Assembly: GCF_046119375.1 (NCBI RefSeq)
Contig: NW_027362761.1
Coordinates: forward strand, 396,304,001 to 396,368,000
Reading direction: 5' to 3'
Source of the DNA: Phyllobates terribilis
Lineage: Eukaryota
Length of the DNA stretch: 64,000 nt
Positions 511 to 51,303 of the stretch are shown here, in pieces. The notes under the pieces were generated by a model. That model had not been told where the DNA came from and made no database searches. It worked only from the letters and a program-made list of their open reading frames with translations. The position numbers were made by a program, and so were the translations under genes. The stretch's first letter is position 1. Every line of letters begins with the position of its first letter.

Positions 511-1426
511 TGATGCTATGCCCAAAAGATTTTACTTCACTAGGTGCAGTAAAAAAATTGGTATTCTATACACAGGTGGTATATCTTGCAACACAGATAG
601 GCTACTCCACTGACTAACACACTCTGCAATAGGGCAAAAAGGATTAGCTTTGCTAGATTCAGCCAAATGCTGTGAAAAAAACTTGCACAGCACTGGCACA
701 GACCTGCCTGGCAAAAACTGATAGGAACTGATGTAACCTAGTCCTGAAAAGGACTCCAATTACAATTAGTCTTTACTCCCACAATCTATCTATTTAAGAG
801 CACAGACCTGCCTGATAAAAGTCGTAGGAAATGCTGTAACCTAGTTCTTAAAAGGACTGCAATCACAACTATTCCCTACTCCCAAGCTATCTGTATATTT
901 GTGCGAAAATTGGCTTGAAATTAACAAGGTATAGCGCACACAGCAACAGCGGTGCCGTCTAACACGCAGCTGCAGCAGTGAGAAAATGGTGGCGACGGGG
1001 AAAATGGCTTGGTCTTATAGGGCAAGGACATGTGACATACACTGCCAATCACACATGCCCTTGCTTGTGTGAAAAAAAGCACTTCGCTCCGTGTGTGCGC
1101 TGCTGATAGGCTGACAGATTGCACCTCCCCACTGCAAATGCGGGAAAGAGAAAAAAAAATGGAGATCTTCATTGTTCCTGCAGAGATCCATCCCCTGCCC
1201 CTCCCCCCGCCCCGCTGTACACTCAAACTGCGTATTAACATTAATTTTCATCATTACTGAGAAAAAATCCAGTTATGATTTTGGTGCACGAACAGTTATC
1301 GAACATAACCTCGAACAGCCGAATTTTTCTCAAATTGTTCGTGTTCGCCGACCGGCTCGAACACCGCCCAAAACAGCTCGAATTTGAGATTGGCGAACAG
1401 TTCAAGTAGAACAACGCTCATCTCTA
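1..1426 (-). mobile_element. One end of a hAT-family element (remainder outside the window)
   Basis: Ends in GCTCATCTCTA at 1416-1426 (TIR TAGAGATGAGC on -). 1270-1426 is the reverse complement of the 44882-45030 terminus. TATA-like and GCCATTTT motifs on - at about 985-1025, followed by the 110-bp array. Confidence 0.75.
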
Positions 1427-27119: not shown

Positions 27120-29850
27120 TAGCGATGGGGAACCCCTGGATGCTCGGGTACGGAGAGTTCGGCCGAACAGCAATTAAAAGTTAAGGTTTCGGGTACCAGA
27201 ACAGAACCCAAACCTGCATTCTTCTGAATGGGGGACTAGAACATCCAAACAGGGGTTTTGATTGACGGTAGCATAGTTAAAATAGGTCAGAGTGCTGCGA
27301 GAGTGCTGTCAGGTGTCAGTGTGATCCTGCAGCTGTCACTGTGACCAGCAGTAAAAAGCTTACCGTGGGTCACAGGTGCCAGCTGATGAGACTACTACTC
27401 CCGTCAGCTGATGCCTGCTGTCACTGATAACAGCGAGAGCAGGCGCCACTGGATGGGAGAAATAGTCACTCATCAGCTGGCACCTGTGCTCAAAGTAAAA
27501 AAAAAGATGTTAAAATTATTAAATTATTTTTTAACTAAAACAAAAAAACACATTATACTCACCTACACCTAATCTCGATGCCCTTTTTTACCCCTGTAAA
27601 AAATAAAAAAGACCATATACTCACCTTAACGCCTTATCCACGATGCCCATGTCACCTGTAAAAAAATCAAAAATAAACTACCATATCCCTCACCTGTTTG
27701 CCGTAATTCCAGTAATCCAGATTGGATCATTTACAGAACAGTCACATTGGGAGATGTGACTTTGCTATCCGGTAGCCCGCGATACACTGACAAGAGAATA
27801 ATGACTCCTGCAGTGTATAGCACTAATCTGTCATGAAATAGGTCACACAAGTTCATCAGCTGATGAACTTCTATGACCTCACTTACGGCACCACCGCTGC
27901 ATGAGAAAATTCTCACGCAGCGGTGATGCAGTAAGTGAGATCACTTGAGCTCATCAGCTGCTGTACTCATGTGACCTCTCTCTTTGCAGCTCAGCACTAA
28001 GCACTGACTATGCGATTACACTCCTGTGTCAATGTCAGACTGCTGTCATGTAGATCAGTCACATCAGTGACTGCTGATGTAACTGCTCTACATTTGATCC
28101 AATCGCCGTGGGATACTCTGGTTTATTTAATCACGTCGGACAGGTGAGGGATATGGTTGTTTTTATTTTTGTTTTTTTACCAGGGACAATGGATTCAAAT
28201 GGATTATGTTTTAGTTGAGTATAAGGTTAATTTTTATATTTTCTGTTTTTACAGGGGACAATAGTTTCAGGGGATTAGGCGTTAGGTGAGTATACTGTGT
28301 TTTTTATTTTCAAATAAATGATAAAAACCGTATGGACTTTCATTTCAAATAAAGGATTTTTTTTCAGGCCGTGTGTTTATTTTCAAACTTGTACTATGGG
28401 GTTAGCAATGGGGGCGTCTTACAGATGCCTCTCCATCACTAACCTGGGCTTCATGTCAGCTGCCAATACAAACCTGACAGGAACCCCATCCCTGTTACCC
28501 CACTTGCCCCCCCATCAGGGCAAGTGGGAAGAGCGAGGCTAAGTGCCAGATATGGCGCATCTTATTGATGCACCATTTCTGGGGCAGTGGAGAGCGGATG
28601 TTATTAGCCTTGAAGGGGGCCAGTATCTATGGCCCCTTCCCTGGCTATTAAAATCAGACAGCAGCTGTCTGGTTAGCCTTCGCTGTTTAGATTTTTAGGG
28701 GGACCCTGAGTCAAAATTTTTCTGGGGTTCCCCTGTAATCTAGCCAGTAAGCGCTAAGCAAACTGCTTTGGGCTGTTATTAATAGCCTGGGAACATCTAT
28801 AGCTAATGGCCCCTTTCCATGGCTAGTAAAATCAGCCCACAGTGGTTGGCTTTCCCTCTGCTGGTTATGAAAATTATACAATAGGCCACGCCATTTTTTT
28901 CATTTATTTTTTTATTTATTACAGTATAATAGTATAATACACACCCAAGGTAACCTTAGTTCCAGGTGTTCCAGCTGCTGGAAAGTCCAGTGAACCTTAA
29001 ATGTCCCCTAAAGTTTCCCATGAGTTTTCAGGGCTTTGCAGCTGCCGGGAGACCAAGTGACTTTGAATTCGAGTGGCTTTGAACTTTATCTGATGAGCTC
29101 CGGTGATCTCACTCACTGCACCATCGCTGCGTGAGAATTTTCTCACCAAGCGGTGGTAGCAAACGTGAGGTCACAGGAGTTCCTCAGCTAATGAACTTGT
29201 GTGACCTCTCTCACAGCAGCTCAGCACTATATACTGTGGGAGCGATTACGCTCCTGTCAGTGTATCACTGGCTGCCAGATAGAGCAGTAATATCTCCCGA
29301 TTTGACTGTTTTGTAAATGATCCGATCACCGAGTGACAATCTAGATTACCGGGATTATGGCAGACAGGTGATAGATATGGTGGTTTATTATTTTTGTTTT
29401 TTTACAGGTGACATGGCCATCGGGGATAAGGCGTTAAGATGAGTATATGGCCTTTTTTTACAGGGGACAAAGGCATCGAGGATTAGTTGTAGGTGAGTAG
29501 AATGTGTTTTTAATTTTTATTTCAATAATTATTTATTAATTTTAACTTTTTTTTTTTACTTTGAGCACAGGTGCCGGCTAATGAGAGACTACTTCTCCCA
29601 TCCAGCGGCGCCTGCTCTCTCTGTTAACAGTGTCAGCAGGTGTCAGCTGATGGGAGTAGAAGTAAGCTTTTTACCACAGGTCACAGTGACAGCAGGGGGA
29701 TTACTCTGATATCTGATAACGTGATCCTGCAGCACTCTGACCTGCGGTAACTATGTGACCGTCGATCAGAGACCCTGTTTCCTGCACTGTCAGGCAGATG
29801 ACAGCTCAGAAAACACCCGAACTCGAACAGTAACACGGACTTCCTGAGTC
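27120..29850. mobile_element. Older foldback non-autonomous element (hAT-like subtermini)
   Basis: 27290-28000 is a degenerate inverted repeat of 29100-29760; CGAAC motifs near the ends; no intact TIR or TSD. Confidence 0.6.
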
Positions 29851-30320: not shown

Positions 30321-30419
30321 GAGCTCACTCTGCTGTGAATTCAGTTAGGGATAGGACGCTGTTGTTCTGAGGGACAGTTTTAGCTACCTATTTGCTCTAT
30401 ACTGCTTTACCCAAGCTAC

Positions 30420-31497: not shown

Positions 31498-31852
31498 GAG
31501 CCTTTCTGCAGCATTGGGCCCTGCAGCCCCAGCCAGATTAGTATTAGCCTATTTTTTGCAGCCTCATCTATTGCATTGTATGTTACCTTCCTACATTGTA
31601 ATAGCTACAAAAAGTTTGTGATACTATCGTTATTACATCTTTAGGCACATCCAGTGTCTTTTTGTGACAAAAAAAACCTAAATAAAGTTCACCAAACACT
31701 CCACTTTACAGTTGTGTAGGCCACATTAGCTCATATTAAAGTCTAGTCCACACTTTATAAAATTAGTGTTTCTTATACCTGTTAGCAGCTGTTCAGGAAT
31801 AAGCACACTAAGCCCTTAGTACTTTTCTGCCTATCTTTATCAGTCTACCAAG

Positions 31853-35245: not shown

Positions 35246-35309
35246 ATAATTGGTTGACAACAGTATCCAGGTCTCCTGTTCTGTTCATGTTTCTACCACC
35301 TGAACTGTA

Positions 35310-38300
35310 ATCCCTGAGCTCCAACACCGCCAGTTGGCGCTCGGAAGTGCCGTCTGCACAGTCAACACTTGCTGCCGTGTTATTGGGGTTCAGTAACGTC
35401 AGCTGTTCTCCTGCTGTGCGGACGGCAATTTCTCCTGATTTGTCCACATCCACTGTACTACACATTTTAAAGTTGCTCCAATTACTCCTCTGGCTCCTCT
35501 GTTTTCATTCTTATCCCTGGGCTCCAGCACCGCCAGTTGGCGCTCGGAAGTGCTGTCTGCACAGTCAACACTTGCTACCATGTTATTGGGGTTCAGTAAC
35601 GTCAGCTGTTCCCCTGCTGTGCGGACGGCAATTTCTCCTGCTCTGTCCACATTCTCACTACTACAGATTTTAAAGTTGCTCCAATTACACCTCTGGCTCC
35701 TCTGTTTTCATTCTTATCCCTGGGCTCCAGCACCGCCAGTTGGCGCTCGGAAGTGCCGTCTGCACAGTCAACACTTGCTGCGGTGTTATTGGGGTTCGGT
35801 AACGTCAGCTGTTCCCCTGCTGTGTTCACGGCAATTTCTCCTGCTCTGTCCATATTCACTGTGCTACTTATTTAAAACTTGCTCCAATTACACCTCTGGC
35901 TCCTCCGTTTTTAGTATTTACCCTGGGCTCCAACACCGCCAGTTGGCGCTCGGAAGTGCTGTCTGCACAGTCAACACTTGCTGCCGTGTTATTGGGGTTC
36001 AGTAACGTCAGCTGTTCTCCTGCTGTGCGGACGGCAATTTCTCCTGCTTTGTCCACATCCACTGTACTACACATTTTAAAGTTGCTCGAATTACACCTCT
36101 GGCTCCTCTGTTTTCATTCTTATCCCTGGGCTCCAGCACCGCCAGTTGGCGCTCGGAAGTGCCGTCTGCACAGTCAACACTTGCTGCCGTGTTATTGGGG
36201 TTCAGTAACGTCAGCTGTTCTCCTGCTGTGCGGACGGCAATTTCTCCTGCTTTGTCCACATCCACTGTACTACACATTTTAAAGTTGCTCGAATTACACC
36301 TCTGGCTCCTCTGTTTTCATTCTTATCCCTGGGCTCCAGCACCACCAGTTGGCGCTCGGAAGTGCCGTCTGCACAGTCAACACTTGCTACCATGTTATTG
36401 GGGTTCAGTAACGTCAGCTGTTCCCCTGCTGTGTTCACGGCAATTTCTCCTGCTCTGTCCATATTCACTGTGCTACTTATTTAAAACTTGCTCCAATTAC
36501 ACCTCTGGCTCCTCCGTTTTTAGTATTTACCCTGGGCTCCAACACCGCCAGTTGGCGCTCGGAAGTGCTGTCTGCACAGTCAACACTTGCTGCCGTGTTA
36601 TTGGGGTTCAGTAACGTCAGCTGTTCCCCTGCTGTGCGGACGGCAATTTCTCCTGCTCTGTCCACATTCTCACTACTACAGATTTTAAAGTTGCTCCAAT
36701 TACACCTCTGGCTCCTCTGTTTTCATTCTTATCCCTGGGCTCCAGCACCGCCAGTTGGCGCTCGGAAGTGCCGTCTGCACAGTCAACACTTGCTGCCGTG
36801 TTATTGGGGTTCAGTAACGTCAGCTGTTCTCCTGCTGTGCGGACGGCAATTTCTCCTGATTTGTCCACATCCACTGTACTACACATTTTAAAGTTGCTCC
36901 AATTACTCCTCTGGCTCCTCTGTTTTCATTCTTATCCCTGGGCTCCAGCACCGCCAGTTGGCGCTCGGAAGTGCTGTCTGCACAGTCAACACTTGCTACC
37001 ATGTTATTGGGGTTCAGTAACGTCAGCTGTTCCCCTGCTGTGCGGACGGCAATTTCTCCTGCTCTGTCCACATTCTCACTACTACAGATTTTAAAGTTGC
37101 TCCAATTACACCTCTGGCTCCTCTGTTTTCATTCTTATCCCTGGGCTCCAGCACCGCCAGTTGGCGCTCGGAAGTGCCGTCTGCACAGTCAACACTTGCT
37201 GCGGTGTTATTGGGGTTCGGTAACGTCAGCTGTTCCCCTGCTGTGTTCACGGCAATTTCTCCTGCTCTGTCCATATTCACTGTGCTACTTATTTAAAACT
37301 TGCTCCAATTACACCTCTGGCTCCTCCGTTTTTAGTATTTACCCTGGGCTCCAACACCGCCAGTTGGCGCTCGGAAGTGCTGTCTGCACAGTCAACACTT
37401 GCTGCCGTGTTATTGGGGTTCAGTAACGTCAGCTGTTCTCCTGCTGTGCGGACGGCAATTTCTCCTGCTTTGTCCACATCCACTGTACTACACATTTTAA
37501 AGTTGCTCGAATTACACCTCTGGCTCCTCTGTTTTCATTCTTATCCCTGGGCTCCAGCACCGCCAGTTGGCGCTCGGAAGTGCCGTCTGCACAGTCAACA
37601 CTTGCTGCCGTGTTATTGGGGTTCAGTAACGTCAGCTGTTCTCCTGCTGTGCGGACGGCAATTTCTCCTGCTTTGTCCACATCCACTGTACTACACATTT
37701 TAAAGTTGCTCGAATTACACCTCTGGCTCCTCTGTTTTCATTCTTATCCCTGGGCTCCAGCACCGCCAGTTGGCGCTCGGAAGTGCCGTCTGCACAGTCA
37801 ACACTTGCTACCATGTTATTGGGGTTCAGTAACGTCAGCTGTTCCCCTGCTGTGTTCACGGCAATTTCTCCTGCTCTGTCCATATTCACTGTGCTACTTA
37901 TTTAAAACTTGCTCCAATTACACCTCTGGCTCCTCCGTTTTTAGTATTTACCCTGGGCTCCAACACCGCCAGTTGGCGCTCGGAAGTGCTGTCTGCACAG
38001 TCAACACTTGCTGCCGTGTTATTGGGGTTCAGTAACGTCAGCTGTTCCCCTGCTGTGCGGACGGCAATTTCTCCTGCTCTGTCCACATTCTCACTACTAC
38101 AGATTTTAAAGTTGCTCCAATTACACCTCTGGCTCCTCTGTTTTCATTCTTATCCCTGGGCTCCAGCACCGCCAGTTGGCGCTCGGAAGTGCTGTCTGCA
38201 CAGTCAACACTTGCTACCATGTTATTGGGGTTCAGTAACGTCAGCTGTTCCCCTGCTGTGCGGACGGCAATTTCTCCTGCTCTGTCCACATTCTCACTAC

Positions 38301-38760
38301 TACAGATTTTAAAGTTGCTCCAATTACACCTCTGGCTCCTCTGTTTTCATTCTTATCCCTGGGCTCCAGCACCGCCAGTTGGCGCTCGGAAGTGCCGTCT
38401 GCACAGTCAACACTTGCTGCGGTGTTATTGGGGTTCGGTAACGTCAGCTGTTCCCCTGCTGTGTTCACGGCAATTTCTCCTGCTCTGTCCATATTCACTG
38501 TGCTACTTATTTAAAACTTGCTCCAATTACACCTCTGGCTCCTCCGTTTTTAGTATTTACCCTGGGCTCCAATACCGCTAGTTGCTGCTCAGAAGTGCCG
38601 TCTGCACAGTCAACGCTTGCTCCAGTGTTATTGGGATTCAGTAACGTCAGCTGATCCCCAGCTGTGTGTCCGGCAAATTCTCCTGCTTTGTCCACATCCA
38701 CTGTAGTACGGATTTAAAACCTCCTCCAAATACACCTCTGGCTCTTCTGTTTTTAGTATT
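35310..38760. repeat. 203-bp satellite, about 17 monomers, with a 1421-bp (7-mer) higher-order repeat
   Basis: Identical ORF-track peptides at offsets of 1421 (35347/36768, 35550/36971, 35956/37377). Confidence 0.97.
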
Positions 38761-41700
38761 TACCCTGGGCTCCAGCACCGCCAGCTGGTTCTCGGCAGTT
38801 CCATTGGCTCTTGTACCTTCTGCTACCCATCCGGGTTCCAGTACCGTCAGCTGGTTCTCGGCAGTGTCTTTGGCACGGGTACTCCCTCCTGCCCAGCCTG
38901 GTTCCCGCACGCCAACTGTTTCCGGGTAGTGTCAACGTCACTTTGCCTCCAATGCGTTGTCCTGTCGTGTTGCGGTCGGGTTAGCCGACTCTATGGTGCC
39001 TGCAGTTTAGGTGACTCCTATGTGGGCTGCGGGATCTGGCAATGAAGGCTGGTTCCATAGTGCCAATAGGACAAGCACCCTCTGTAGGACTGTGGGTTTT
39101 GGTAACTGCGGCCGGCTCGCGGCCTTGAACTTTTTTTTTACATGGGTACCTTCTGCTACCCATCCGGGTTCCAGTACCGTCAGCTGGTTCTCGGCAGTGC
39201 CTTTGGATTAGGTGCCTCCTTCTCGGTATCCAAGTTCCACCAACGTCTGCTGGTCCTTGGTAGTGCTTTCTGGCACAGGTACCTCCTGCTTAGTAACCGA
39301 GTTCCAGTAACATCAGCTGGTCCTCGGTAGTTCCATTGGCTCTTGTACCTTCTGCTACCCATCCGGGTTCCAGTACCGTCAGCTGGTCCTCGGTAGTTCC
39401 ATTTGCTCTTGTATCTTCTGCTACCCATCCGGGTTCCAGTACCGTCAGCTGGTCCTCGGTAGTTCCATTTGCTCTTGTATCTTCTGCTACCCATCCGGGT
39501 TCCAGTACCGTCAGCTGGTTCTCGGCAGTGCCTTTGGATTAGGTGCCTCCTTCTCGGTATCCAAGTTCCACCAACGTCTGCTGGTCCTTGGTAGTGCTTT
39601 CTGGCACAGGAACCTCCTGCTTAGTAACCGAGTTCCAGTAACATCAGCTGGTCCTCGGTAGTTCCATTGGCTCTTGTACCTTCTGCTACTCATCCGGGTT
39701 CCAGTACCGTCAGCTGGTCCTCGGTAGTTCCATTTGCTCTTGTATCTTCTGCTACCCATCCGGGTTCCAGTACCGTCAGCTGGTTCTCGGCAGTGTCTTT
39801 GGCACGGGTACTCCCTCCTGCCCAGCCTGGTTCCAGCACGCCAGCTGTTTCCGGGTAGTGTCAACGTCACTTTGCCTCCAATGCGTTGTCCTGTCGTGTT
39901 GCGGTCGGGTTAGCCGACTCTATGGTGCCTGCAGTTTAGGTGACTCCTATGTGGGCTGCGGGATCTGGCAATGAAGGCTGGTTCCATAGTGCCAATAGGA
40001 CAAGCACCCTCTGTAGGACTGTGGGTTTTGGTAACTGCGGCCGGCTCGCGGCCTTGAACTTTTTTTTTACATGGGTACCTTCTGCTACCCATCCGGGTTC
40101 CAGTACCGTCAGCTGGTTCTCGGCAGTGCCTTTGGATTAGGTGCCTCCTTCTCGGTATCCAAGTTCCACCAACGTCTGCTGGTCCTTGGTAGTGCTTTCT
40201 GGCACAGGTACCTCCTGCTTAGTAACCGAGTTCCAGTAACATCAGCTGGTCCTCGGTAGTTCCATTGGCTCTTGTACCTTCTGCTACCCATCCGGGTTCC
40301 AGTACCGTCAGCTGGTCCTCGGTAGTTCCATTTGCTCTTGTATCTTCTGCTACCCATCCGGGTTCCAGTACCGTCAGCTGGTTCTCGGCAGTGTCTTTGG
40401 CACGGGTACTCCCTCCTGCCCAGCCTGGTTCCAGCACGCCAGCTGTTTCCGGGTAGTGTCAACGTCACTTTGCCTCCAATGCGTTGTCCTGTCGTGTTGC
40501 GGTCGGGTTAGCCGACTCTATGGTGCCTGCAGTTTAGGTGACTCCTATGTGGGCTGCGGGATCTGGCAATGAAGGCTGGTTCCATAGTGCCAATAGGACA
40601 AGCACCCTCTGTAGGACTGTGGATTTTGGTAACTGCGGCCGGCTCGCGGCCTTGAACTTTTTTTTTACATGGGTACCTTCTGCTACCCATCCGGGTTCCA
40701 GTACCGTCAGCTGGTTCTCGGCAGTGCCTTTGGATTAGGTGCCTCCTTCTCGGTATCCAAGTTCCACCAACGTCTGCTGGTCCTTGGTAGTGCTTTCTGG
40801 CACAGGTACCTCCTGCTTAGTAACCGAGTTCCAGTAACATCAGCTGGTCCTCGGTAGTTCCATTGGCTCTTGTACCTTCTGCTACCCATCCGGGTTCCAG
40901 TACCGTCAGCTGGTCCTCGGTAGTTCCATTTGCTCTTGTATCTTCTGCTACCCATCCGGGTTCCAGTACCGTCAGCTGGTCCTCGGTAGTTCCATTTGCT
41001 CTTGTATCTTCTGCTACCCATCCGGGTTCCAGTACCGTCAGCTGGTTCTCGGCAGTGCCTTTGGATTAGGTGCCTCCTTCTCGGTATCCAAGTTCCACCA
41101 ACGTCTGCTGGTCCTTGGTAGTGCTTTCTGGCACAGGTACCTCCTGCTTAGTAACCGAGTTCCAGTAACATCAGCTGGTCCTCGGTAGTTCCATTGGCTC
41201 TTGTACCTTCTGCTACCCATCCGGGTTCCAGTACCGTCAGCTGGTCCTCGGTAGTTCCATTTGCTCTTGTATCTTCTGCTACCCATCCGGGTTCCAGTAC
41301 CGTCAGCTGGTTCTCGACAGTGTCTTTGGCACGGGTACTCCCTCCTGCCCAGCCTGGTTCCAGCACGCCAGCTGTTTCCGGGTAGTGTCAACGTCACTTT
41401 GCCTCCAATGCGTTGTCCTGTCGTGTTGCGGTCGGGTTAGCCGACTCTATGGTGCCTGCAGTTTAGGTGACTCCTATGTGGGCTGCGGGATCTGGCAATG
41501 AAGGCTGGTTCCATAGTGCCAATAGGACAAGCACCCTCTGTAGGACTGTGGGTTTTGGTAACTGCGGCCGGCTCGCGGCCTTGAACTTTTTTTTTACATG
41601 GGTACCTTCTGCTACCCATCCGGGTTCCAGTACCGTCAGCTGGTTCTCGGCAGTGCCTTTGGATTAGGTGCCTCCTTCTCGGTATCCAAGTTCCACCAAC

Positions 41701-43070
41701 GTCTGCTGGTCCTTGGTAGTGCTTTCTGGCACAGGAACCTCCTGCTTAGTAACCGAGTTCCAGTAACATCAGCTGGTCCTCGGTAGTTCCATTGGCTCTT
41801 GTACCTTCTGCTACCCATCCGGGTTCCAGTACCGTCAGCTGGTCCTCGGTAGTTCCATTTGCTCTTGTATCTTCTGCTACCCATCCGGGTTCCAGTACCG
41901 TCAGCTGGTCCTCGGTAGTTCCATTTGCTCTTGTATCTTCTGCTACCCATCCGGGTTCCAGTACCGTCAGCTGGTTCTCGGCAGTGCCTTTGGATTAGGT
42001 GCCTCCTTCTCGGTATCCAAGTTCCACCAACGTCTGCTGGTCCTTGGTAGTGCTTTCTGGCACAGGTACCTCCTGCTTAGTAACCGAGTTCCAGTAACAT
42101 CAGCTGGTCCTCGGTAGTTCCATTGGCTCTTGTACCTTCTGCTACCCATCCGGGTTCCAGTACCGTCAGCTGGTCCTCGGTAGTTCCATTTGCTCTTGTA
42201 TCTTCTGCTACCCATCCGGGTTCCAGTAGCGTCAGCTGGTTCTCGGCAGTGTCTTTGGCACGGGTACTCCCTCCTGCCCAGCCTGGTTCCAGCACGCCAG
42301 CTGTTTCCGGGTAGTGTCAACGTCACTTTGCCTCCAATGCGTTGTCCTGTCGTGTTGCGGTCGGGTTAGCCGACTCTATGGTGCCTGCAGTTTAGGTGAC
42401 TCCTATGTGGGCTGCGGGATCTGGCAATGAAGGCTGGTTCCATAGTGCCAATAGGACAAGCACCCTCTGTAGGACTGTGGGTTTTGGTAACTGCGGCCGG
42501 CTCGCGGCCTTGAACTTTTTTTTTACATGGGTACCTTCTGCTACCCATCCGGGTTCCAGTACCGTCAGCTGGTTCTCGGCAGTGCCTTTGGATTAGGTGC
42601 CTCCTTCTCGGTATCCAAGTTCCACCAACGTCTGCTGGTCCTTGGTAGTGCTTTCTGGCACAGGTACCTCCTGCTTAGTAACCGAGTTCCAGTAACATCA
42701 GCTGGTCCTCGGTAGTTCCATTGGCTCTTGTACCTTCTGCTACCCATCCGGGTTCCAGTAACATCAGCTGGTCCTCGGTAGTTCCATTGGCTCTTGTACC
42801 TTCTGCTACCCATCCGGGTTCCAGTACCGTCAGCTGGTTCTCGGCAGTGCCTTTGGATTAGGTGCCTCCTTCTCGGTATCCAAGTTCCACCAACGTCTGC
42901 TGGTCCTTGGTAGTGCTTTCTGGCACAGGTACCTCCTGCTTAGTAACCGAGTTCCAGTAACATCAGCTGGTCCTCGGTAGTTCCATTGGCTCTTGTACCT
43001 TCTGCTATCCATCCGGGTTCCAGTACCGTCAGCTGGTCCTCGGTAGTTCCTCAGCTTTCTTGTACCTTCT
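38760..43070. repeat. Composite satellite: 63-bp subunits inside about 270-330-bp blocks inside 929/598-bp units
   Basis: Unique block recurs with offsets 929, 598, 929, 929 (ORF track 38981, 39910, 40508, 41437, 42366). Confidence 0.95.
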
Positions 43071-43124
43071 GCTACATTTCCAAGTTCAAGCTTTTTGAAA
43101 TGGTTCTTGGTAATCACTCTGGAT

Positions 43125-43960
43125 CTCCCTGACGAGGACCCTGAAGACGAGGACCCTGAAGACCAACCCTAAGAAGACGAGGACCCCGAAGACAATGACG
43201 CTGAAGATGAGGACCCTGAAGACCACCCCGAAGAAGACGAGGACCCTGAAGACCACCCCGAAGAAGACGAGGACCCTGAAGACCACCCCGAAGAAGACGA
43301 GGACCCCGAAGACGAGGACCCAGAAGACCAACCCGAAGAAGACGAGGACCCCGAAGACGAGGACCCCCGAAGACGACGACCCTGAAGACCACCCCGAAGA
43401 AGACCAAGAAGATGACCCTGAAGAAGTTGACCAAGAAGACAAAGAAGAGAAGACAAGCACCAAGATACAGAAAAACAAGAGACAGAAAACCAAGAAGCAG
43501 AAATACAAGAAGCTGCAGAACAAAAAGCGGAAGAACATTAAGCATAAGACTAAAAATCAGAGCAAAAGATAATATCTAAATTATAAGCAGAAGATGACTA
43601 AGCAGTGTATGGGGGTGAGTCCGTTCCTCCTCGTGGTGCCCCTGGAAAAGACCTGCTGCTGCAGGCCAAACTGAACGCGGACAAATCCTGTTGTAAATCT
43701 TTTGTGACGGGCAGAACGAAAGGTGTAATGTCCAACCTTTTATAGATAACAACTACAGGAATGCCTGTCACAAATAAGAATATGATGAAGAAGAAGAATA
43801 TGAAGAAGATGAAGAAGTAGAATATGAAGAATGTAAAAAAAAGAATAATACGAAGAAGGTGAAGAAGAAGAAGGTGAAGAAGAAGTGGATGAAAAAGATG
43901 CTGAGGATGATGAAGGAGAAAGTGTGGGAGAAGTAAAAAAGAAGGTGAAGAGCATGGAAG
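43125..43960 (+). repeat. GAAGAC/GAA-rich low-complexity region
   Basis: About 30-bp unit GAAGAAGACGAGGACCCTGAAGACCACCCC, then GAA-rich tracts. Confidence 0.85.
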
Positions 43961-44881
43961 TAGTGAAACATAAATATCTGACAAAATATAAAAATACTTA
44001 ACATAGTTAATATTTCCGTAACTCAGAACATAATAAAAAAATATTAATTCCTGCTATTCCATTTGACTGGGCTAAACCTCTATGCCTTTATTGTCTCCCC
44101 CACCTCCCCCAATACATTCTACATTATTCTTAGTTGTTTTCCTTCATGTAGAAATAACCTACAAGGAAAGAAAGGGTTTATTTTAATTCCGATATTTATG
44201 TCCCATTGACTTGCATTGGTTTCCGGTATCGGAATCGGCGATATCCGATACTTTTTCGGTATCGGTCCGATCCAATCCGATCCGATATTTCCCGATATCG
44301 GAAGGTATCGCTCAACACTAGTTGTAAGGTTAAATCCATTGAGTTCAACCTAATGCCTAATATTTTCAATCAAAGGATGTCACTTATCAACTACCAATGA
44401 CAGTGCAGGCTCCAGTTTCTATGCTGCATAATATAATCCGGCACCTCACCACCTGATGTTGCCACAAACATATGTTCCAACATATGCAATGGTAAATTCG
44501 ATCACATTTCAATTTTTCATCAGCCTGAGGCTCAGTCATACTGCTCCATCATAAATCCTGGTGGTCATTTTTCACCATTATAGAAACATTGCTCTTCTGG
44601 CAATGATCACAACTTTGTCTCAGGTGAAATATATGTTTTAAATAATATTGCAGGATCAAATTGAGAGTGTGTATCATGCAGTGAGCATGTGCTACTTTTC
44701 ATGGCAGCCATAATGTTTCCAGCGTTGTTATTTACCTGCTTGTGTTTGATTAGAAACCATCCTGTGAGACATTTGATACAATATTGTACTCTATTTTTGG
44801 TGAAAACAAGGAGATGTGCATTTTGGAGGTTATGGAGAAAGTTTATAAACATCACCTGCTGTGGATGTATTATCTCATCAC

Positions 44882-47800
44882 TAGAGATGAGCGGTGTTCG
44901 ACTAGAACTGTTCGCCAATCTCAAATTCGAGCTGTTTTGGGCGGTGTTCGAGTTGTTCGACGAACCCGAACGATTTGCAAAAAATTCGGCTGTTCGAGGT
45001 TATGTTCGATAACTGTTCGTACACCAAAAGCGTGTCCTGCATGGATTGTCTGCCACTCACTGTAATGCCACAGCCATGGTGGTTGTGGCATTACAGTGAT
45101 TGCCCAAATCGATGGGAACAGTGCCAACAGTGAAACATGAAAAGCCGGCAATTCAGCAGCGGCATACACCGGTACCCGACAATTTAGAACCGAAAGAATA
45201 GAGCATCACACATAGATTAGATAGATAGAAACATGTCAGCCACATATATACGAAGTACAGTGAAAGTGCTGGTTACTGTACTTGTCATTTAGCGTAAAGG
45301 ATTTATCAAAAAAAATAATAGTGTTTTCATGCACCGTCTCTTTAAAAAAGCCGGCCGGCAATTCAGCAGCGGTACCCGACAATTTATAACAGACAGAATA
45401 GAGCTTCACACATAGATTAGATAGATAGAAACATGTCAGTCACATATATATGAAGTACAGTGATAGTGTTGGTTACTGTACTTGTCATTTAGTATTAAAA
45501 TAAAGGATTTATTATTAAAAAAATTGGCGTGGGGTTCCCCTTAATTTTAGGCTCTAGCGGAGGTTAAGCAGACGGCTGGGGCAGATGTTTGAAGCCTGGG
45601 AAGGGGGTAATACCCACGGAGCTTCCCAGGCTACTAATATCAGCCCCCAGCTGAATACATAGCCTTTACTAGCTATTAAAATGGGGGACCCCCCAAAAAA
45701 AATGACGTGGGGTCCCCCCTAATTTAATAGCTAGCAAAGGCTAGGCAGACAGCTGGGGGCTGATATTAATAGCCCAGGAAGGGAGCCATGAATATTGGCC
45801 CCCTCCCAGGCTAGAAACACCAGCCGTCAGCCGCCCCAGAAATGGCGCATTCATAGGATGCGCCAATTCTGGCACTTAGCCTCGCTCTTCCACGCTGCCC
45901 TGGTGCGGTGGCAGGGGGTAATAGGGTTGGGGTTGATGTCAGCTTATAATGCCAGCTGACATCAAGCCCAGGTTAGTAATGGAGAGGCGTCTATAAGACA
46001 CCCCCATTACTAACCCCATAGTCAAAGTTAAAAAAAACACAAACACCCAGAATAAAGTCCTTTAATTGAAATAAAGACACAGTCCTTTATTGTTCTAAAT
46101 TAAACCATACTTACCGTCACGCCCATTCCAGCTGAAGCCAACGATCTCCTGCAATAAAAGAAAAATAATAAAGCAACCTCATCCTTACCTTTCCATGGTT
46201 CCCACGACAGCTTCAGCTCTGCTACATCGAGATGACAGGCTGGACCGCAGCAGAACGCTGCCATCCAGCCTCTCATCCCGCAGACACTGAGAAGCGCAGG
46301 CTTGCTTGCGCTGCTCAGCGTCTCTCTGTGACGACATCCAGATGAGCCGAGTTCATGTCCAATGAACTCGGCTCACCTCATGCACGTCACTGACAGCGTG
46401 GGAAAATTCTCAAGCTGAAGCGCTGAGTGCAGGAGAATTTTCCCACGCTGTCAGTGACGTGCATAAGGTGAGCTCATGTCCAATGAACTCAGCTCACCTC
46501 CTGCACGTCACTGACAGCGTGGGAGAATTCTCCTGCACTCAGCGCTTCAGTGTGAGAATTCTCCCACGCTGAAGCGCTGAGTGCAGGAGAATTTTCCCAC
46601 GCTGTCAGTGACGTGCATGAGGTGAGACGAGTTCATTGGACATTAACTCGGCTCATCTGGATGCCCTCACAGAGAGACACTGTGGAGCGCAAGCAAGCCT
46701 GCGCTTCTCAGTGTCTGCGGGATGACAGACTGGATGGCAGCGTTCTGCTGCGGTCCAGCCTGTCATCTCGATGTAGCAGAGCTGAAGCTGTCATGGGAAC
46801 CATGGAAAGGTAAGGATGATGTTGCTTTATTATTTTTCTTTTATTTCAGGAGATCGTTGGCTTCAGCTGGAATGGGCGTGATGGTAAGTATGGTTTAATT
46901 TAGAACAATAAAGAATTGTGTGTTTATTTCAATTAAAGGACTTTTTTCTGGGTGTTGTGTTTTTTTTAAATTCTTTACTAGAAATTCATGGTGGTCATGT
47001 CTAATATTGGCGTGACCCCATGAATTTCGGGCTTAGGGCCAGCTGATAATGCCAAGCTGGCCCTAACCCCTTTATTACCCAGTGAGCCACCGCATCAGGG
47101 CCCTGGATGAGTTGGGTACAGCGCCAGAAGATGGCGCTTCTATGAACGCGCCATTTTCCGGGGTGGCTGCGGACTGCAATTTGCAGCGGGGGTGGCCCAG
47201 AAAGCTTGGGCCTCCCTGCGCTGCGGATTCCAGCCCCCAGCTGCCTAGTTGTACCTGGCTGGACACAAAAACAGGGCGAAGCCCCACGTCAATTTTCTTT
47301 AAATTATTTCATGAAATAATTAAGAAAAAAGGGCTTCCCTATATTGCTGTGTCCGGCCAGGTACAAATAGGCAGCTGGTGGTTGGGGGCAGCCCGTTCCT
47401 GCCTGCTGTACCTGGCTGGACACAAATATAGTGCGAAGCCCCACGTCAATTTTTTTTAAATTATTTCATGAATTTCCTGAAATAATTTAAAAAAATTGAA
47501 GTGGGGCTTCGCACTATATTTGTGTCCAGCCAGGTACAGCAGGCAGGAACGGGCTGCCCCCATCCACCAGCTGCCTATTTGTACCTGGCCGGACACAACA
47601 ATATAGGGAAGCCCTTTTTTTCTTAATTATTTCATGAATTTCATGAAATAATTAAAAAAAAAGTACGTGGGGCTTCGCCCTATTTTTGTGTCCAGCCAGG
47701 TACAACTAGGCAGCTGGGGGCTGGAATCTGCAGCGCAGGGAGGCCCAAGCTTTCTGGGCCCCCCCCCGCTACAAATTGCAGTCCGCAGCCACCCCGGAAA

Positions 47801-50204
47801 ATGGCGCGTTCATAGAAGCGCCATCTTCTGGCGCTGTACCCAACTCATCCAGGGCCCTGGTGCGGTGGCTCACTGGGTAATAAAGGGGTTAGGGCCAGCT
47901 TGGTATTATCAGCTGGCCCCAAGCCCAAAATTCATGGGGTCACGCCAGAATTAGACATGACCGCCATGAATTTCTAGTAAAGTATTTAAAAAAAACACAA
48001 CACCCAGAATAAAGTCCTTTAATTGAAATAAAGACACAATTCTTTATTGTTCTAAATTAAACCATACTTACCATCACACCCATTCCAGCTGAAGCCAACG
48101 ATCTCCTGCAATAAAAGAAAAATAATAAACCAACCTCATCCTTACCTTTCCATGGTTCCCACGACAGCTTCAGCTCTGCTACATCGAGAAGACAGGCTGG
48201 ACCGCAGCAGAACGCTGCCATCCAGTCTGTCATCCCGCAGACACTGAGAAGCGCAGGCATGCTTGCGCTCCTCACTGTCTCGCTGTGACGGCATCCAGAT
48301 GAGCCGAGGTCATGTCCAATGAACTCGGCTCACCTCATGCACGTCACTGACAGCGTGGGAAAATTCTCACGCTGAAGTGCTGAGTGCAGGAGAATTCTCC
48401 CACGCTGTCAGTGATGTGCATGAGGTGAGCTCATGTCCAATGAACTCAGCTCACCTCCTGCACGTCACTGACAGCGTGGGAAAATTCTCCTGCAATCAGC
48501 GCTTCAGCGTGAGAATTTTCCCACGCTGTCAGTGACGTGAATGAGGTGAGCCGAGTTCATTGGACATGAACTCGGCTCATCTGGATGTCGTCACAGAGAG
48601 ACGCTGAGCAGCGCAAGCAAGCCTGCGCTTCTCAGTGTCTGCGGGATGACAGGCTGGATGGCAGCGTTCTGCTGCGGTCCAGCCTGTCATCTCGATGTAG
48701 CAGAGCTGAAGCTGTCGTGGGAACCATGGAAAGGTAAGGATGAGGTTGCTTTATTATTTTTCTTTTATTGCAGGAGATCGTTGGCTTCAGCTGGAATGGG
48801 CGTGATGGTAAGTATGGTTTAATTTAGAACAATAAAGGACTGTGTCTTTATTTCAATTAAAGGACTTTATTCTGGGTGTTTGTGTTTTTTTTAACTTTGA
48901 CTATGGGGTTAGTAATGGGGGTGTCTTATAGACGCCTCTCCATTACTAACCTGGGCTTGATGTCAGCTGGCATTATAAGCTGACATCAACCCCAACCCTA
49001 TTACCCCCTGCCACCGCACCAGGGCAGCGTGGAAGAGCGAGGCTAAGTGCCAGAATTGGCGCATCCTATGAATGCGCCATTTCTGGGGCGGCTGACGGCT
49101 GGTGTTTCTAGCCTGGGAGGGGGCCAATATTCATGGCTCCCTTCCTGGGCTATTAATATCAGCCCCCAGCTGTCTGCCTAGCCTTTGCTAGCTATTAAAT
49201 TAGGGGGGACCCCACGTCATTTTTTTTGGGGGGTCCCCCATTTTAATAGCTAGTAAAGGCTATGTATTCAGCTGGGGGCTGATATTAGTAGCCTGGGAAG
49301 CTCCGTGGGTATTACCCCCTTCCCAGGCTTCAAACATCTGCCCCAGCCGTCTGCTTAACCTCCGCTAGAGCCTAAAATTAAGGGGAACCCCACGCCAATT
49401 TTTTTAATAATAAATCCTTTATTTTAATACTAAATGACAAGTACAGTAACCAACACTATCACTGTACTTCATATATATGTGACTGACATGTTTCTATCTA
49501 TCTAATCTATGTGTGATGCTCTATCTTTCTGTTCTAAATTGTCGGGTACCGCTGCTGAATTGCCGGCCGGCTTTTTTAAAGAGACAGTGCATGAAAACAC
49601 TATTATTTTTTTAAATAAATCCTTTACACTAAATGACAAGTACAGTAAGCAACACTGTCACTGTACTTATTATATATGTGACTGACATGTTTCTATCTAT
49701 CTAATCTATGTGTGAAGCTCTATTCTTTCTGTTCTAAATTGTCGGGTACAGATGCTGAATTGCCGGCCGGCTTTTTTAAAGAGACGGTGCATGAAAACAC
49801 TAATATTTTTTTTAATAAATCCTTTACACTAAATGACAAGTGCAGTAACCAACACTGTCACTGTGCTTCTTATATGTGTGACTGACATGTTTCTATCTAT
49901 CTAATCTATGTGTGATGCTCTATTCCTTCTTGTCTAAATTGTCGGGTACCGGTATATGCCGCTGCTGAATTTGCCGGCCGGCTTTTTTAAAGAGAGTGTC
50001 TTCTGAGCAGTTTGTCAGCTTTTGGACACCTTTGCAGGTGTTTTCTATGTGTTTCTATGTGTTTTTGTTTGCCTGCCATTGGTTTTAACGGTGTTCGACG
50101 GTGTTCTAAGGTGTTCGACGAACAGTTCGACGAACAGTTCCTCGAACATCCCGGTGTTCGACGAACCGAACCGAACCCGAACACTATGGGGTGGCTCAAC
50201 ACTA
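44882..50204. mobile_element. 5,323-bp non-autonomous hAT-type foldback element
   Basis: TAGAGATGAGC ... GCTCAACACTA; TSD CTCATCAC at 44874-44881 and 50205-50212; interior is a palindrome centred at about 47473; no transposase. Confidence 0.95.
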
Positions 50205-50414
50205 CTCATCACCAGTAAAAAAAATAAGCCAACTTTCAGTCTTGCATTACCATCACATAAAATATTGACTCAATGGGCCATGTAAAATCATAGCCACATC
50301 TGCTGCTGTCAACAATGGAGTGCAACTTGGAGCATGACGTCAATTCCATGGATTGGACCACCATGTGAAAGTATAAAGCAGAGATGGTTTTATTCAATAA
50401 ATTGTGGTGACTAG

Positions 50415-51303
50415 TGTAATGCAGCGACTTGCTGGCATTACGGTAATGGTCTAGGATGTGTTTTACCTGACCATATACCTTCCACCTCAGGTGACTGGTC
50501 ACGTGACTGTGACATCGCACAGGTCCTGTATGCACAGTAAAGGTCTGTACATATGACTGGGACAGCACACAGGACCTATACACACAGCTGACTGATCACA
50601 TGACTGTGACATCAGCAAGGTCCTGTCAGTATGTGTGTGTGTGTGCACAGGATATATAAACCCTGGTAATTTGAGACAGGTGTGTCCGGTGTGAGGCGTG
50701 AGGCCTGTGCTCCGTGTGTGTGGGACACCGTTTGTGAGAGGCCCAGGGAGACCGAGAGTGAAGCCTGGCTGCCTGAAAGGCCGAGCCTGGATCCTGTGCG
50801 TGGATGTCAGTGGCCTTTGAAGGAGAGCCGGCTTGGTGAAGAACCCTGAAAGGCGCAGGCTGGATGTCAAGTGTGGAAGACATACCAGTAGCCTACGAGG
50901 GGACGACGGCTAGAGACCCCCACCTGGGAAAGCCGCAAAGCCACAGTGGTGACGGAATAAACGGACTGTAGCAGCCAAAACCCGCTAAAGGTAAAACGCT
51001 GCGTTATATGGACATTTATGTTGTTGCCTAGCCGAGGGCTATAACGGGAGTCAAGTGGACGTATCTGTCGCTGGAAAGGCTCCCGAATTGTGATGTGTGT
51101 AATATGCCGGTCTGCCACTTGAGAAGCTCCCGGAGGTGATAGGTGTAAACATGCCGGGCGTATACTAAGATGGACTGTGTGATTAGCGGTTTATGACGAA
51201 ATAATAAACTGCATTGTGAAATATCGGAAGGACATTGCTTATGTGCCTTAATTGACCCGGTGCAGCGAGTATCCCCCATTATGATGTCTAGCGCTGCCTT
51301 ACA
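50415..51303 (+). mobile_element. Solo LTR (889 bp)
   Basis: TGTAATGCAGCG ... CGCTGCCTTACA; TSD CTAG; TATATAAA 50653-50660; AATAAA 51203-51208. Confidence 0.9.

What the first reader, a model, noticed from the sequence alone, without database searches (positions are those of the whole stretch)
44882..50204. Palindrome within palindrome within palindrome in a 5.3-kb mobile element
Seen: arms of about 2.3-2.5 kb (about 45140-47468 and 47478-49985) around a spacer of 9 bp or less. Each arm holds its own palindrome of about 900 bp (46040-46965; 47990-48895) whose centre is made of repeated short hairpins (ACAGCGTGGGAAAATT..AATTTTCCCACGCTGT; GAGCCGAGTTCAT..ATGAACTCGGCTC). The arms differ in copy number of a repeat of about 190 bp (2 versus 3). 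The perfect TSD shows it moved as a unit. Spacerless multi-kb palindromes are normally unstable; this one could extrude branched cruciforms, yield long dsRNA, or grow by iterative fold-back replication.
Basis: seen in the sequence. Interest (0 to 1): 0.75.

Follow-up and report, generated by a model that had tools for sequence, protein, structure and literature searches.

The report
Frog hAT transposon carrying nested palindrome
A 5.3-kb protein-less cut-and-paste (hAT-type) transposon in a poison-frog genome whose whole cargo is a palindrome built of smaller palindromes; it is real and recently inserted (an allele without it still exists), and it is a striking variant of a known kind of element, not a new kind.

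Summary
Window 44882-50204 (5,323 bp) is flanked by a perfect 8-bp duplication (CTCATCAC). It has short imperfect hAT-type terminal repeats and GTTCGA subterminal repeats, and no coding capacity.

Between asymmetric ends of 248 and 212 bp lies a 4.86-kb quasi-palindrome. Its arms are 2,343 and 2,519 bp and 97% alike. The axis is a short hairpin motif carrying a 9-bp insert. Each arm is itself a 1.6-kb palindrome centred on a hairpin array.

New here:
- A 971-nt contig from a public DNA run joins 44873 directly to 50205. That is the exact empty site, so the insertion is a presence/absence polymorphism.
- About 66 of the 70 arm-to-arm mismatches appear shared by the high-copy family, so the palindrome was inherited, not grown at this locus.
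- A 976-bp tract is 99.8% alike between arms, against 93-95% on either side, which indicates arm-to-arm copying.
- Small hairpins persist through two-sided changes in 20-30% diverged paralogues.
- An older relative with the same design lies at 27122-29840.

How the palindromes formed (snap-back at short hairpins) is inferred. RNA output is untested.

This scan has already noted the same family on other DNA of this genome. Verdict: a new variant of a known kind.

The parts
44874..44881 (.). Left copy of the 8-bp target-site duplication CTCATCAC
   Evidence: It fits the nTnnnnAn target pattern of Ac-type hAT elements (own knowledge).
44882..45129 (+). Left hAT end, not part of the palindrome. 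It holds the terminal repeat TAGAGATGAGCGG, five GTTCGA subterminal repeats at 44896-45004, and a small private hairpin at 45054-45102.
   Evidence: 44882-45029 is 92% alike to another element end at window 1426-1279. Contigs of other subfamilies diverge at 45029 and 45043 (table 7).
45130..47472 (+). Left arm of the large (level-1) palindrome, 2,343 bp
45144..45515 (+). Tandem repeat of about 200 bp, two copies (left arm)
   Evidence: (D6)
45406..46381 (+). Left half of the 976-bp tract that is 99.8% alike to its mirror at 48541-49516 (arm-to-arm copying tract)
   Evidence: 2 mismatches in 976 columns against 68 in about 1,365 elsewhere; Fisher p = 4e-14
45695..47299 (.). Level-2 palindrome inside the left arm, centre near 46497. 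The outer M modules are 78% alike and the inner 46028-46970 part is 95.6% alike.
   Evidence: (I4)
46322..46676 (.). Hairpin array at the centre of the left level-2 palindrome: a 121-bp unit of alternating 13-bp and 18-41-bp stems
   Evidence: (D4, D5, I12, I13, I23)
47230..47720 (.). Central array of alternately inverted units of about 80 bp. The level-1 symmetry axis at about 47473 lies on the middle one of three equivalent short palindromes (47303, 47460, 47626).
   Evidence: (D9, D12, I7, I9, I18, I19, I22)
47474..49992 (-). Right arm of the level-1 palindrome, 2,519 bp
47652..49227 (.). Level-2 palindrome inside the right arm, centre near 48440. The inner 47985-48894 part is 95.7% alike and the outer part is 80% alike.
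   Evidence: (I3)
48541..49516 (-). Right half of the 99.8% tract
49325..49992 (-). Tandem repeat of about 200 bp, three copies (right arm). The extra copy is 49750-49949.
   Evidence: (D1)
49993..50204 (-). Right hAT end, not part of the palindrome. It holds the terminal repeat TAGTGTTGAGCCA (read on the - strand; 9 of 13 positions match the left one), four GTTCGA repeats and seven CGAAC repeats.
   Evidence: Contigs of other subfamilies diverge at 49996 (table 7).
50205..50212 (.). Right copy of the target-site duplication CTCATCAC
   Evidence: In run X1 a 971-nt contig runs from 44873 straight into 50205 (table 8).
1279..1426 (-). Left end of a second element of the same hAT family (92% alike) with a different interior. 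It is cut by the window start and may be the autonomous or a gene-carrying form.
   Evidence: The loose-end consensus at 45029 in three runs matches its interior.
27122..29840 (+). Older relative with the same design. It has a hAT-like end (TAGCGATGGGGAAC with GTTCGG/CGAAC motifs), arms 27247-27957 and 29090-29780 that are about 80% alike, an M-like module at 28213-28917, and no recognisable right end.

Best explanation
This is a young copy of a very abundant, non-coding (non-autonomous) hAT-superfamily DNA transposon of a poison frog. It is still polymorphic for presence or absence.

How it moves. Only its two asymmetric ends of about 250 and 210 bp serve transposition. They carry short imperfect terminal repeats and GTTCGA-type subterminal repeats, which are the expected binding sites for a transposase supplied in trans. 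The 8-bp duplication and the exact empty site show that the whole 5.3 kb was cut and pasted as one piece.

What it carries. Everything between the ends is cargo: a 4.86-kb quasi-palindrome that was already present, with nearly all of its arm-to-arm differences, in the source lineage.

How the cargo was built. It arose in several episodes:
1. An old inverted duplication of a hairpin-rich module (M1 against M2, now 78-80% alike).
2. A later burst that made both the 0.9-kb inner palindromes and the whole-arm palindrome at about the same time. The four copies of the inner unit are all about 95-96% alike, in a star pattern.
3. Tandem gain or loss of repeat units.
4. A recent copying of about 1 kb from one arm to the other (99.8% alike).

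Inferred steps. The inverted duplications most likely arose by snap-back or template switching at short hairpins during break repair or replication, because each symmetry axis lies on a pre-existing short palindrome. The imperfect arms, the 9-bp insert at the axis and the indels are what let a vertebrate genome tolerate it.

Shown versus inferred. Shown: the anatomy, the hAT hallmarks, the empty allele, the lack of coding capacity, the uneven arm identity and the compensated hairpins. Inferred: mobilisation in trans, the snap-back origin and arm-to-arm conversion as the process.
For: Anatomy and significance.

hAT hallmarks:
- The 8-bp duplication and the terminal repeats.
- GTGTTCGAC occurs 4 times against 0.22 expected, all in the ends.
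- All nine + strand GTTCGA of the 64-kb window lie in the two ends.
- TAGNGNTGAGC occurs 10 times in the window against 0.55 expected, marking many hAT ends there, including the intact neighbour at 30045-44320.
- hAT elements have 8-bp duplications and 10-25-bp terminal repeats (PMC3942097).
- Hermes needs about 220 bp of each end and binds subterminal repeats through its BED domains (PMC10368747).

Empty site: record 1 of run X1 (971 nt, depth 12, the same as the flank) lies on 44600-44873 and 50205-50396 without a gap and with no mismatch (table 8).

Family-wide structure:
- Summed word depth is 0.6-2.1 million across every module of the element, against 5-12 in the flank, in three DNA runs from at least three samples and two studies. 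The spread is only 3.4-fold.
- Only 12 substitution sites are flagged as differing in at least 10% of laid contigs.
- Four of them (45272, 46627, 47663, 47949) are arm mismatches where most family contigs carry the letter that restores symmetry. So this copy has about four private changes, and the other roughly 66 mismatches appear family-wide.

No coding: the longest ORF is 125 aa, Pfam finds nothing for 8 ORFs, there is no tRNA, and Rfam gives only sub-threshold generic hairpin matches.

Lineage: an older relative with the same design lies in the same window.

Axes on short palindromes.

Snap-back at short inverted repeats next to a break is an established way to make large palindromes in yeast and CHO cells (PMC7999016).
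Against: - No transposase-bearing partner with these ends could be identified. The only other family end in the window is cut off at the window start.
- No read or contig was shown to bridge the level-1 axis. All runs were served as short assembled contigs, and k-mer contigs stop at palindrome centres.
- The tool warned that some differences were not counted, so the figure of '66 of 70 shared' is approximate.
- Family structure on other chromosomes rests on unverified earlier notes of this scan.
- Arm-to-arm mismatches are 26 transitions to 44 transversions. That is unlike ordinary vertebrate point mutation and is unexplained.
- The filled-site junctions were not individually confirmed in the public runs.
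Confidence: 0.8

Rival explanations
1. Assembly or sequencing artefact: a fold-back chimeric long read was assembled into a false palindrome.
For: Palindromic chimeras are a known long-read artefact. No contig was shown to cross the axis.
Against: The arms differ by 70 substitutions and 12 indels, including 200, 33 and 9 bp. The arm-specific letters are carried by contigs of three other DNA runs. The palindrome sits inside distinct left and right hAT ends with a perfect 8-bp duplication and a matching empty site. An older relative with the same layout lies 15 kb away.
Confidence: 0.02
2. The large palindrome arose from two element copies joined tail-to-tail. This would be a double insertion into one target, or a composite insertion made by alternative transposition with re-replication, as for maize Ac/Ds. 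The inner ends were then lost.
For: Alternative transposition of Ac/Ds makes composite insertions with inverted duplications of transposon sequence (bioRxiv 10.1101/2020.01.07.897926). Earlier notes of this scan report tail-to-tail hAT dimers in this genome (s1-224807, s1-238356; unverified).
Against: A dimer would have two like ends outside. Here the left and right ends are unlike beyond the terminal repeat, and the palindrome stops 248 and 212 bp short of them. No terminal-repeat pattern or GTTCGA cluster is left inside. The axis lies on a short palindrome of an internal repeat array, not on a target duplication.
Confidence: 0.08
3. The palindrome grew at this locus after insertion (in-situ fold-back growth).
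For: The arms differ in repeat copy number, so some change after the duplication is certain.
Against: The insertion is young enough for the empty allele to persist. This copy has only about four private substitutions, yet the arms differ by 3-7% outside one tract. Nearly all of those differences, and even depth over all modules, are seen in family contigs of other animals.
Confidence: 0.03
4. The cargo is kept because it does something. As a transcript it would give a long hairpin RNA feeding small-RNA silencing, like Mu killer or the Ac composite insertions. As DNA it would fold the two ends together, so that a 5-kb element transposes like a miniature one.
For: The predicted hairpins are extremely stable. 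A run guessed to be RNA holds family contigs with a profile unlike DNA: a 61-fold spread against 3.4-fold, high over the 200-bp repeats and inner units and lowest at the centre. Hairpins are kept by two-sided changes across 20-30% diverged paralogues: 22 pairs, against 13.6 +/- 2.2 in shuffles and at most 9 when partners are slid. The design recurs in an older relative. Precedents are PMC3440606.
Against: No listed holder is on record as RNA, and the RNA label of X10 is a guess. The cargo shares nothing detectable with the interior of the other family member, so a hairpin RNA would target only itself. Compensated hairpins can also come from templated correction of quasi-palindromes without any selection.
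Confidence: 0.1
5. An independent Foldback-type transposon sits nested inside a short hAT shell.
For: Cargo modules occur elsewhere in the window outside this element, at 9751-10200 and 28213-28917, 61-75% alike.
Against: There is no target duplication or terminal structure at the palindrome's outer borders (45130, 49992). The right border coincides, within 4 bp, with the point where other hAT subfamilies diverge. The 28-kb copy is itself inside hAT-like ends.
Confidence: 0.05

Closest known systems
Non-autonomous hAT elements (maize Ds, Drosophila hAT MITEs such as Mar and the BuT2 MITEs)
   Same: An 8-bp target duplication, short imperfect terminal repeats, subterminal repeat clusters, no transposase, an interior replaced by other DNA, and mobilisation in trans (PMC3942097, PMC3517528, PMC10368747).
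   Different: It is 5.3 kb rather than a few hundred bp. The whole interior is a nearly spacer-free 4.9-kb palindrome nested to at least four levels. It is high-copy and still polymorphic in a vertebrate.
Foldback (FB) elements and Galileo (P superfamily) of Drosophila
   Same: Elements that are mostly two long inverted arms with internal tandem repeats and dynamic arm structure. Galileo arms reach 1.6 kb at 97.5% identity (PMC4168063).
   Different: In those elements the long inverted repeats are the termini themselves. Here the ends are asymmetric hAT ends and the palindrome is internal cargo. The duplication is 8 bp, against 7 bp (Galileo) or 9 bp (FB, own knowledge). A different transposase superfamily is implied.
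Ac/Ds composite insertions and Mu killer (maize)
   Same: Inverted duplications of transposon sequence several kb long that can give hairpin RNA (PMC3440606).
   Different: Those are single immobile loci that contain transposase sequence and silence the family. This is a mobile, amplified element whose arms hold no transposase sequence. No RNA evidence was obtained here.
Palindromes made by snap-back at short inverted repeats (yeast, CHO cells, Tetrahymena rDNA)
   Same: A large inverted duplication whose axis lies on a short pre-existing inverted repeat with a spacer of a few bases (PMC7999016).
   Different: Those are chromosome-scale or amplicon events in experiments or tumours. Here the product sits inside a transposon, was repeated at several scales and was then spread through a germ line.
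Sex-chromosome palindromes with arm-to-arm gene conversion (own knowledge)
   Same: Arms kept alike by intrachromosomal copying; here a 976-bp tract at 99.8% inside arms that are 93-95% alike.
   Different: The scale is kb, not tens to hundreds of kb. There are no genes. The spacer is 9 bp rather than kilobases.

Membership tests
hAT superfamily (non-autonomous member) | 8-bp target-site duplication | tested here: met
   CTCATCAC at 44874-44881 and 50205-50212. The empty-site contig holds one copy.
hAT superfamily (non-autonomous member) | Short (10-25 bp) imperfect terminal inverted repeats | tested here: met
   TAGAGATGAGCGG against TAGTGTTGAGCCA, 9 of 13. The intact neighbouring hAT has TAGTGTTGAGC at both ends. 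The pattern occurs 10 times in the window against 0.55 expected.
hAT superfamily (non-autonomous member) | Clusters of short subterminal repeats in about 200 bp of each end, arranged asymmetrically | tested here: met
   GTTCGA occurs 5 times in the left end and 4 times in the right end, and nowhere else on the + strand of the window. GTGTTCGAC occurs 4 times against 0.22 expected.
hAT superfamily (non-autonomous member) | Target preference nTnnnnAn (Ac-type; own knowledge) | tested here: met
   CTCATCAC has T at position 2 and A at position 7. This is one site only, so it is weak evidence.
hAT superfamily (non-autonomous member) | A related autonomous element that encodes a BED/DDE/hAT-dimerisation transposase between the same ends | not testable with these tools
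   The only other end of this family (1426-1279) is cut by the window start, and no transposase ORF lies in 1-1426.
hAT superfamily (non-autonomous member) | Cut-and-paste insertion shown by an exact empty site | tested here: met
   Record 1 of run X1 joins 44873 to 50205 with no extra letters (table 8).
Foldback (FB) / Galileo-type elements | The long inverted repeats reach the very ends of the element and are its termini | tested here: not met
   The palindrome stops 248 bp and 212 bp inside. The ends are unlike each other beyond 13 bp.
Foldback (FB) / Galileo-type elements | 7-bp (Galileo) or 9-bp (FB) target duplication | tested here: not met
   The duplication is 8 bp. Galileo makes 7-8 bp with the consensus GTATTAC (PMC4168063).
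MITE | Small size (under about 800 bp), non-coding, high copy | tested here: not met
   It is non-coding and high-copy but 5,323 bp long.
Hairpin-RNA silencing locus (Mu killer type) | An inverted duplication that includes transposase or autonomous-element sequence and is transcribed into dsRNA and siRNA | tested here: inconclusive
   No similarity to the interior of the other family member. No run on record as RNA holds it, and one run guessed to be RNA has a non-DNA-like profile.

The most novel reading that the evidence does not exclude
The palindromic design is not a passive accident. It is a heritable, actively maintained trait of a hAT lineage. Arms and hairpins would be kept symmetric at every scale, from 12-bp stems with compensated changes, through the 1-kb arm-to-arm tract, to the same layout in an older, about 25-30% diverged relative. 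The reason would be that self-pairing brings the two ends together, so a 5-kb element transposes like a miniature one, or that it supplies a hairpin RNA. On this reading the family would be thousands of dated, natural, nearly spacer-free 5-kb palindromes tolerated in a vertebrate germ line.
Probability: 0.15. Interest if true: 0.7.

Novelty: new variant of a known kind. Interest (0 to 1): 0.45.

Why it matters
Long, nearly spacer-free palindromes are regarded as fragile in eukaryotes (PMC7999016). Here a vertebrate germ line carries a 4.9-kb one in very many copies, and at least this copy is recent enough to be polymorphic. That makes the family a ready-made natural series for several questions:
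- How are long palindromes tolerated?
- How do they decay, through changes at the centre, indels and arm divergence?
- How are they repaired, through arm-to-arm copying?
- Does a self-pairing cargo help or hinder cut-and-paste transposition or small-RNA silencing?

For annotation, such elements can confound assemblers, repeat-masking and short-read mapping in giant amphibian genomes.

Tried and rejected
- Two scans of metagenome contigs. The hairpin motif gave nothing. The terminal-repeat pattern gave two GC-rich bacterial contigs that are chance matches.
- The search of earlier findings by sequence was blank.
- Rfam gave only sub-threshold matches to assorted miRNA hairpin models on both strands, as any perfect hairpin gives. 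No family membership follows.
- Pfam on the 8 longest ORFs and a tRNA scan found nothing.
- A literature search for the terminal-repeat strings returned only unrelated primer matches. The poison-frog genome papers report hAT abundance but no palindromic hAT.
- The tail-to-tail dimer origin, in-situ growth, a nested Foldback element and an artefact were considered and judged unlikely (see the rival explanations).
- I looked for splicing of the intron-like GT..AG stretches in the inner unit. No such joint is listed for the possible RNA run, but most joints were not shown.
- The reads tools served only assembled contigs, so the axis could not be bridged and starts, ends and strand of any RNA could not be seen.


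Full report
**1. What is there**

Window 44882-50204 (5,323 bp) is bounded by a perfect 8-bp direct repeat, CTCATCAC, at 44874-44881 and 50205-50212.

The ends have hAT hallmarks:
- The element starts TAGAGATGAGCGG and, read from the other end, TAGTGTTGAGCCA. These match at 9 of 13 positions.
- The intact 14.3-kb hAT next door (30045-44320) has TAGTGTTGAGC at both ends and an 8-bp duplication.
- The pattern TAGNGNTGAGC occurs 10 times in the window against 0.55 expected.
- Both ends carry clusters of GTTCGA-type subterminal repeats. All nine + strand GTTCGA of the 64-kb window lie within about 125 bp of the two ends.
- GTGTTCGAC occurs 4 times against 0.22 expected.

These are the defining cis features of hAT elements. 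The family has 8-bp duplications and 10-25-bp terminal repeats (PMC3942097). The subterminal repeats are bound by the transposase BED domain, and Hermes needs about 220 bp of each end (PMC10368747).

There is no coding capacity. The longest ORF is 125 aa. Eight ORFs have no Pfam match. There is no tRNA. Rfam gives only sub-threshold generic hairpin matches.

**2. The palindromes**

Level 1:
- Between a 248-bp left end and a 212-bp right end, which are unlike each other, lie arms 45130-47472 and 47474-49992.
- They align with 70 mismatches and 12 indels, about 97% identity.
- The largest indels are one extra 200-bp repeat copy at 49750-49949, 33 bp in the left hairpin array, and 9 bp.

Level 2:
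- Each arm is itself a palindrome. In the left arm 45695-47299 aligns to its own reverse complement at 78% over 1,663 columns.
- Within it, the inner 0.9 kb is 95.6% alike and the outer M modules are 78% alike.
- The right arm mirrors this.

Level 3 and below:
- The level-2 centres are 121-bp arrays of alternating short hairpins.
- Further sub-palindromes lie at 45573-45833, 47230-47385 and 47308-47472, and there are many 10-15-bp stems.

Folding energies are far beyond shuffles, with z = -72.6 and -79.

The level-1 axis is not a true spacer. It is a short palindrome (AATTATTTCA|TGAAATAATT) carrying a 9-bp insert. Equivalent motifs at 47303 and 47626 are mirror partners of each other.

**3. 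It moved as one piece, recently**

The run search listed 20 runs that hold part or all of the stretch, from 6 studies of one organism. All were served as assembled contigs.

When four runs were laid on 44600-50500, record 1 of run X1 was the key result (table 8):
- It is 971 nt long with depth 12, the same as the flank.
- It lies on 44600-44873 and then, without a gap, on 50205-50396.
- It shows no mismatch.

That is the exact empty site with one copy of CTCATCAC. An 8-bp overlap cannot create a false join in a 31-mer graph, so molecules without the insertion exist. Either the assembled animal is heterozygous or the site is polymorphic among animals. hAT excision usually leaves a footprint (own knowledge), so this is most simply the allele from before the insertion.

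This is compatible with the same allele but not shown.

**4. The palindrome is a family trait**

Three DNA runs, from at least three samples and two studies, show summed word depth of 0.6-2.1 million over every module, against 5-12 in the flank. The spread along the element is only 3.4-fold. The tool warns that this is no copy number. It does show that all parts are about equally and very highly repeated.

Only 12 substitution sites were flagged where at least 10% of laid contigs carry another letter:
- Four of them (45272, 46627, 47663, 47949) are arm-to-arm mismatches at which most family contigs carry the letter that restores symmetry.
- So this copy has about four private changes (under 0.1%), which fits a recent insertion.
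- The other roughly 66 arm differences appear shared by the family. The count is approximate, because the tool says some differences were not counted.

Loose-end consensus sequences show where other subfamilies branch off:
- They share only 44882-45029 or 44882-45043 on the left, and 49996-50204 on the right.
- The consensus at 45029 matches the interior of a second family end at window 1426-1279.

So the cargo is 45044-49995, carried between ends that are shared with other elements.

**5. History read from divergence**

Arm-to-arm identity is very uneven:

| Zone | Coordinates | Identity |
|---|---|---|
| 200-bp repeats | 45130-45405 | 93.4% |
| Middle tract | 45406-46381 against 48541-49516 | 99.8% (2 mismatches in 976) |
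| Inner part | 46382-47472 | 95.4% |

The middle tract differs from the rest with Fisher p = 4e-14.

The four copies of the inner unit form a star. A1 and its level-1 partner are 99.4% alike, and every other pair is 95.2-96.2% alike. The outer parts of level 2 (M1 against M2) are only 78-80% alike.

The simplest history has five steps:
1. An old inverted duplication of the M module.
2. A burst that made the inner palindromes and the whole-arm palindrome at about the same time.
3. Changes in repeat copy number.
4. A copying of about 1 kb from one arm to the other.
5. Amplification of the family, and then this insertion.

My read-based check suggests the tract is inherited, which agrees with that note.

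One oddity is unexplained. The 70 mismatches are 26 transitions and 44 transversions.

**6. Small hairpins are kept through divergence**

I aligned M1, the two M2 copies and two old paralogues elsewhere in the window (9835-10200 and 28360-28730). Mean column identity is 72%.
- 22 of 97 predicted pairs show changes on both sides that keep the pair.
- The shuffled control gives 13.6 +/- 2.2, and 0 of 500 shuffles reach 22.
- The control with slid partners gives 3-9.
- One 12-bp stem differs at four pairs between M1 and M2, all compensated.

There are only about four independent sequences, so this is suggestive rather than proof. Either the hairpins are selected, or they are renewed by templated correction of quasi-palindromes.

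**7. An older relative**

At 27122-29840 there is a hAT-like end (TAGCGATGGGGAAC with GTTCGG/CGAAC motifs). It is followed by arms of about 700 bp that are about 80% alike (27247-27957 and 29090-29780). The arms surround a hairpin-rich core with an M-like module at 28213-28917, 72% alike to the young element. The right end is not recognisable. The design therefore predates the young family.

**8. Mechanism**

Shown:
- It is a non-autonomous hAT-type insertion with a palindromic cargo that was inherited.

Inferred:
- Mobilisation in trans by a transposase that recognises the GTTCGA repeats.
- Formation of each inverted duplication by snap-back or template switching at a short hairpin next to a break or stalled fork. 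This route is established experimentally (PMC7999016), and it fits axes that lie on pre-existing short palindromes.
- Arm-to-arm copying by gene conversion.

Alternative transposition with re-replication, which makes inverted duplications of Ac, is a hAT-specific alternative for the large palindrome. It is disfavoured because no inner ends or internal target duplication remain.

Whether the cargo helps transposition by bringing the ends together, or feeds small-RNA pathways, is open. No listed holder is on record as RNA. One run guessed to be RNA (X10) holds family contigs with a 61-fold uneven profile, high on the 200-bp repeats and the inner units and lowest at the centre. The DNA runs show a 3.4-fold spread.

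**9. Comparison and novelty**

- It works like a Ds-type passenger element and passes every testable hAT feature.
- It resembles Foldback and Galileo elements in being mostly two long arms (PMC4168063). It fails their defining features, because the arms are not the termini and the duplication is 8 bp.
- Poison-frog genome papers report hAT abundance: 3.9% of the Dendrobates tinctorius assembly (PMC11152451) and 255 Mb in Oophaga pumilio (PMC6278860). They describe no palindromic hAT.
- This scan has already noted the same family on other DNA of this genome (s1-193827, s1-204928, s1-204908, s1-220972, s1-220981, s1-217963).
- New in this report are the empty allele, the family-wide nature of the arm differences, the three-zone identity pattern with the star of inner units, the compensated hairpins and the older relative.
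- Verdict: a new variant of a known kind.

**10. Limits**

- The single read-laying run gave contigs only.
- No frog genome collection was searchable, so copy counts, the autonomous partner and direct bridging of the axis remain to be done.

Noticed in passing
window 1-1426 (- strand): A second element of the same hAT family: its left end is 92% alike over 148 bp. Its interior is different and looks like a promoter (CCAAT-like and TATAAG-like boxes near 1040-990). A tandem repeat of about 120 nt follows near 300-560. The element is cut by the window start and may be the autonomous or a gene-carrying form.
   Followed up: partly
window 27122-29840: An older, partly truncated relative with hAT-like GTTCG-type ends, arms about 80% alike, and the same hairpin core, intron-like stretch and M-module layout.
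   Followed up: partly
window 46700-46970, 48620-48895; also 28100-28340, 29340-29500: The inner unit holds stretches that look like mini-exons of about 30 nt separated by GT..AG intervals of about 40 nt, followed by AATAAA motifs. The same pattern with different sequence is in the older relative. In the possible RNA run, these bins are among the relatively richest. No spliced joint was listed.
   Followed up: partly
window 45130-49992: Arm-to-arm mismatches are 26 transitions against 44 transversions, close to unbiased and unlike ordinary vertebrate point mutation. This is unexplained. It could reflect error-prone repair synthesis or templated changes.
   Followed up: no
window 4171, 15188, 21760 (- strand): Three more TAGRGATGAGCG-type hAT ends with different subterminal sequences. 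With the others, that makes 10 matches to TAGNGNTGAGC in 64 kb against 0.55 expected, so several hAT families are packed into this window.
   Followed up: no
window 25163-26801: 213-nt inverted repeats, 99% alike, 1,213 bp apart, giving an element of about 1.64 kb. The size and long terminal repeats suggest a young Tc1/mariner-type transposon.
   Followed up: no
window 24124-24412 and 22264-22343: Two further small palindromes. One has 140-nt arms, 84% alike, 9 nt apart. The other is a spacer-free pair of 40-nt arms, 88% alike.
   Followed up: no
window 9751-10200: Another diverged copy (61-71% alike) of the hairpin-rich M module. It lies in a region of strong GC skew (6-10 kb), outside any recognised hAT ends.
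   Followed up: no
window 50313-50626: The right flank becomes repetitive about 100 bp beyond the insertion. Summed depth is 25,000-67,000 against 5-12 in the left flank, and there are 42-nt repeats at 50488-50626. The element therefore landed beside another repeat.
   Followed up: no
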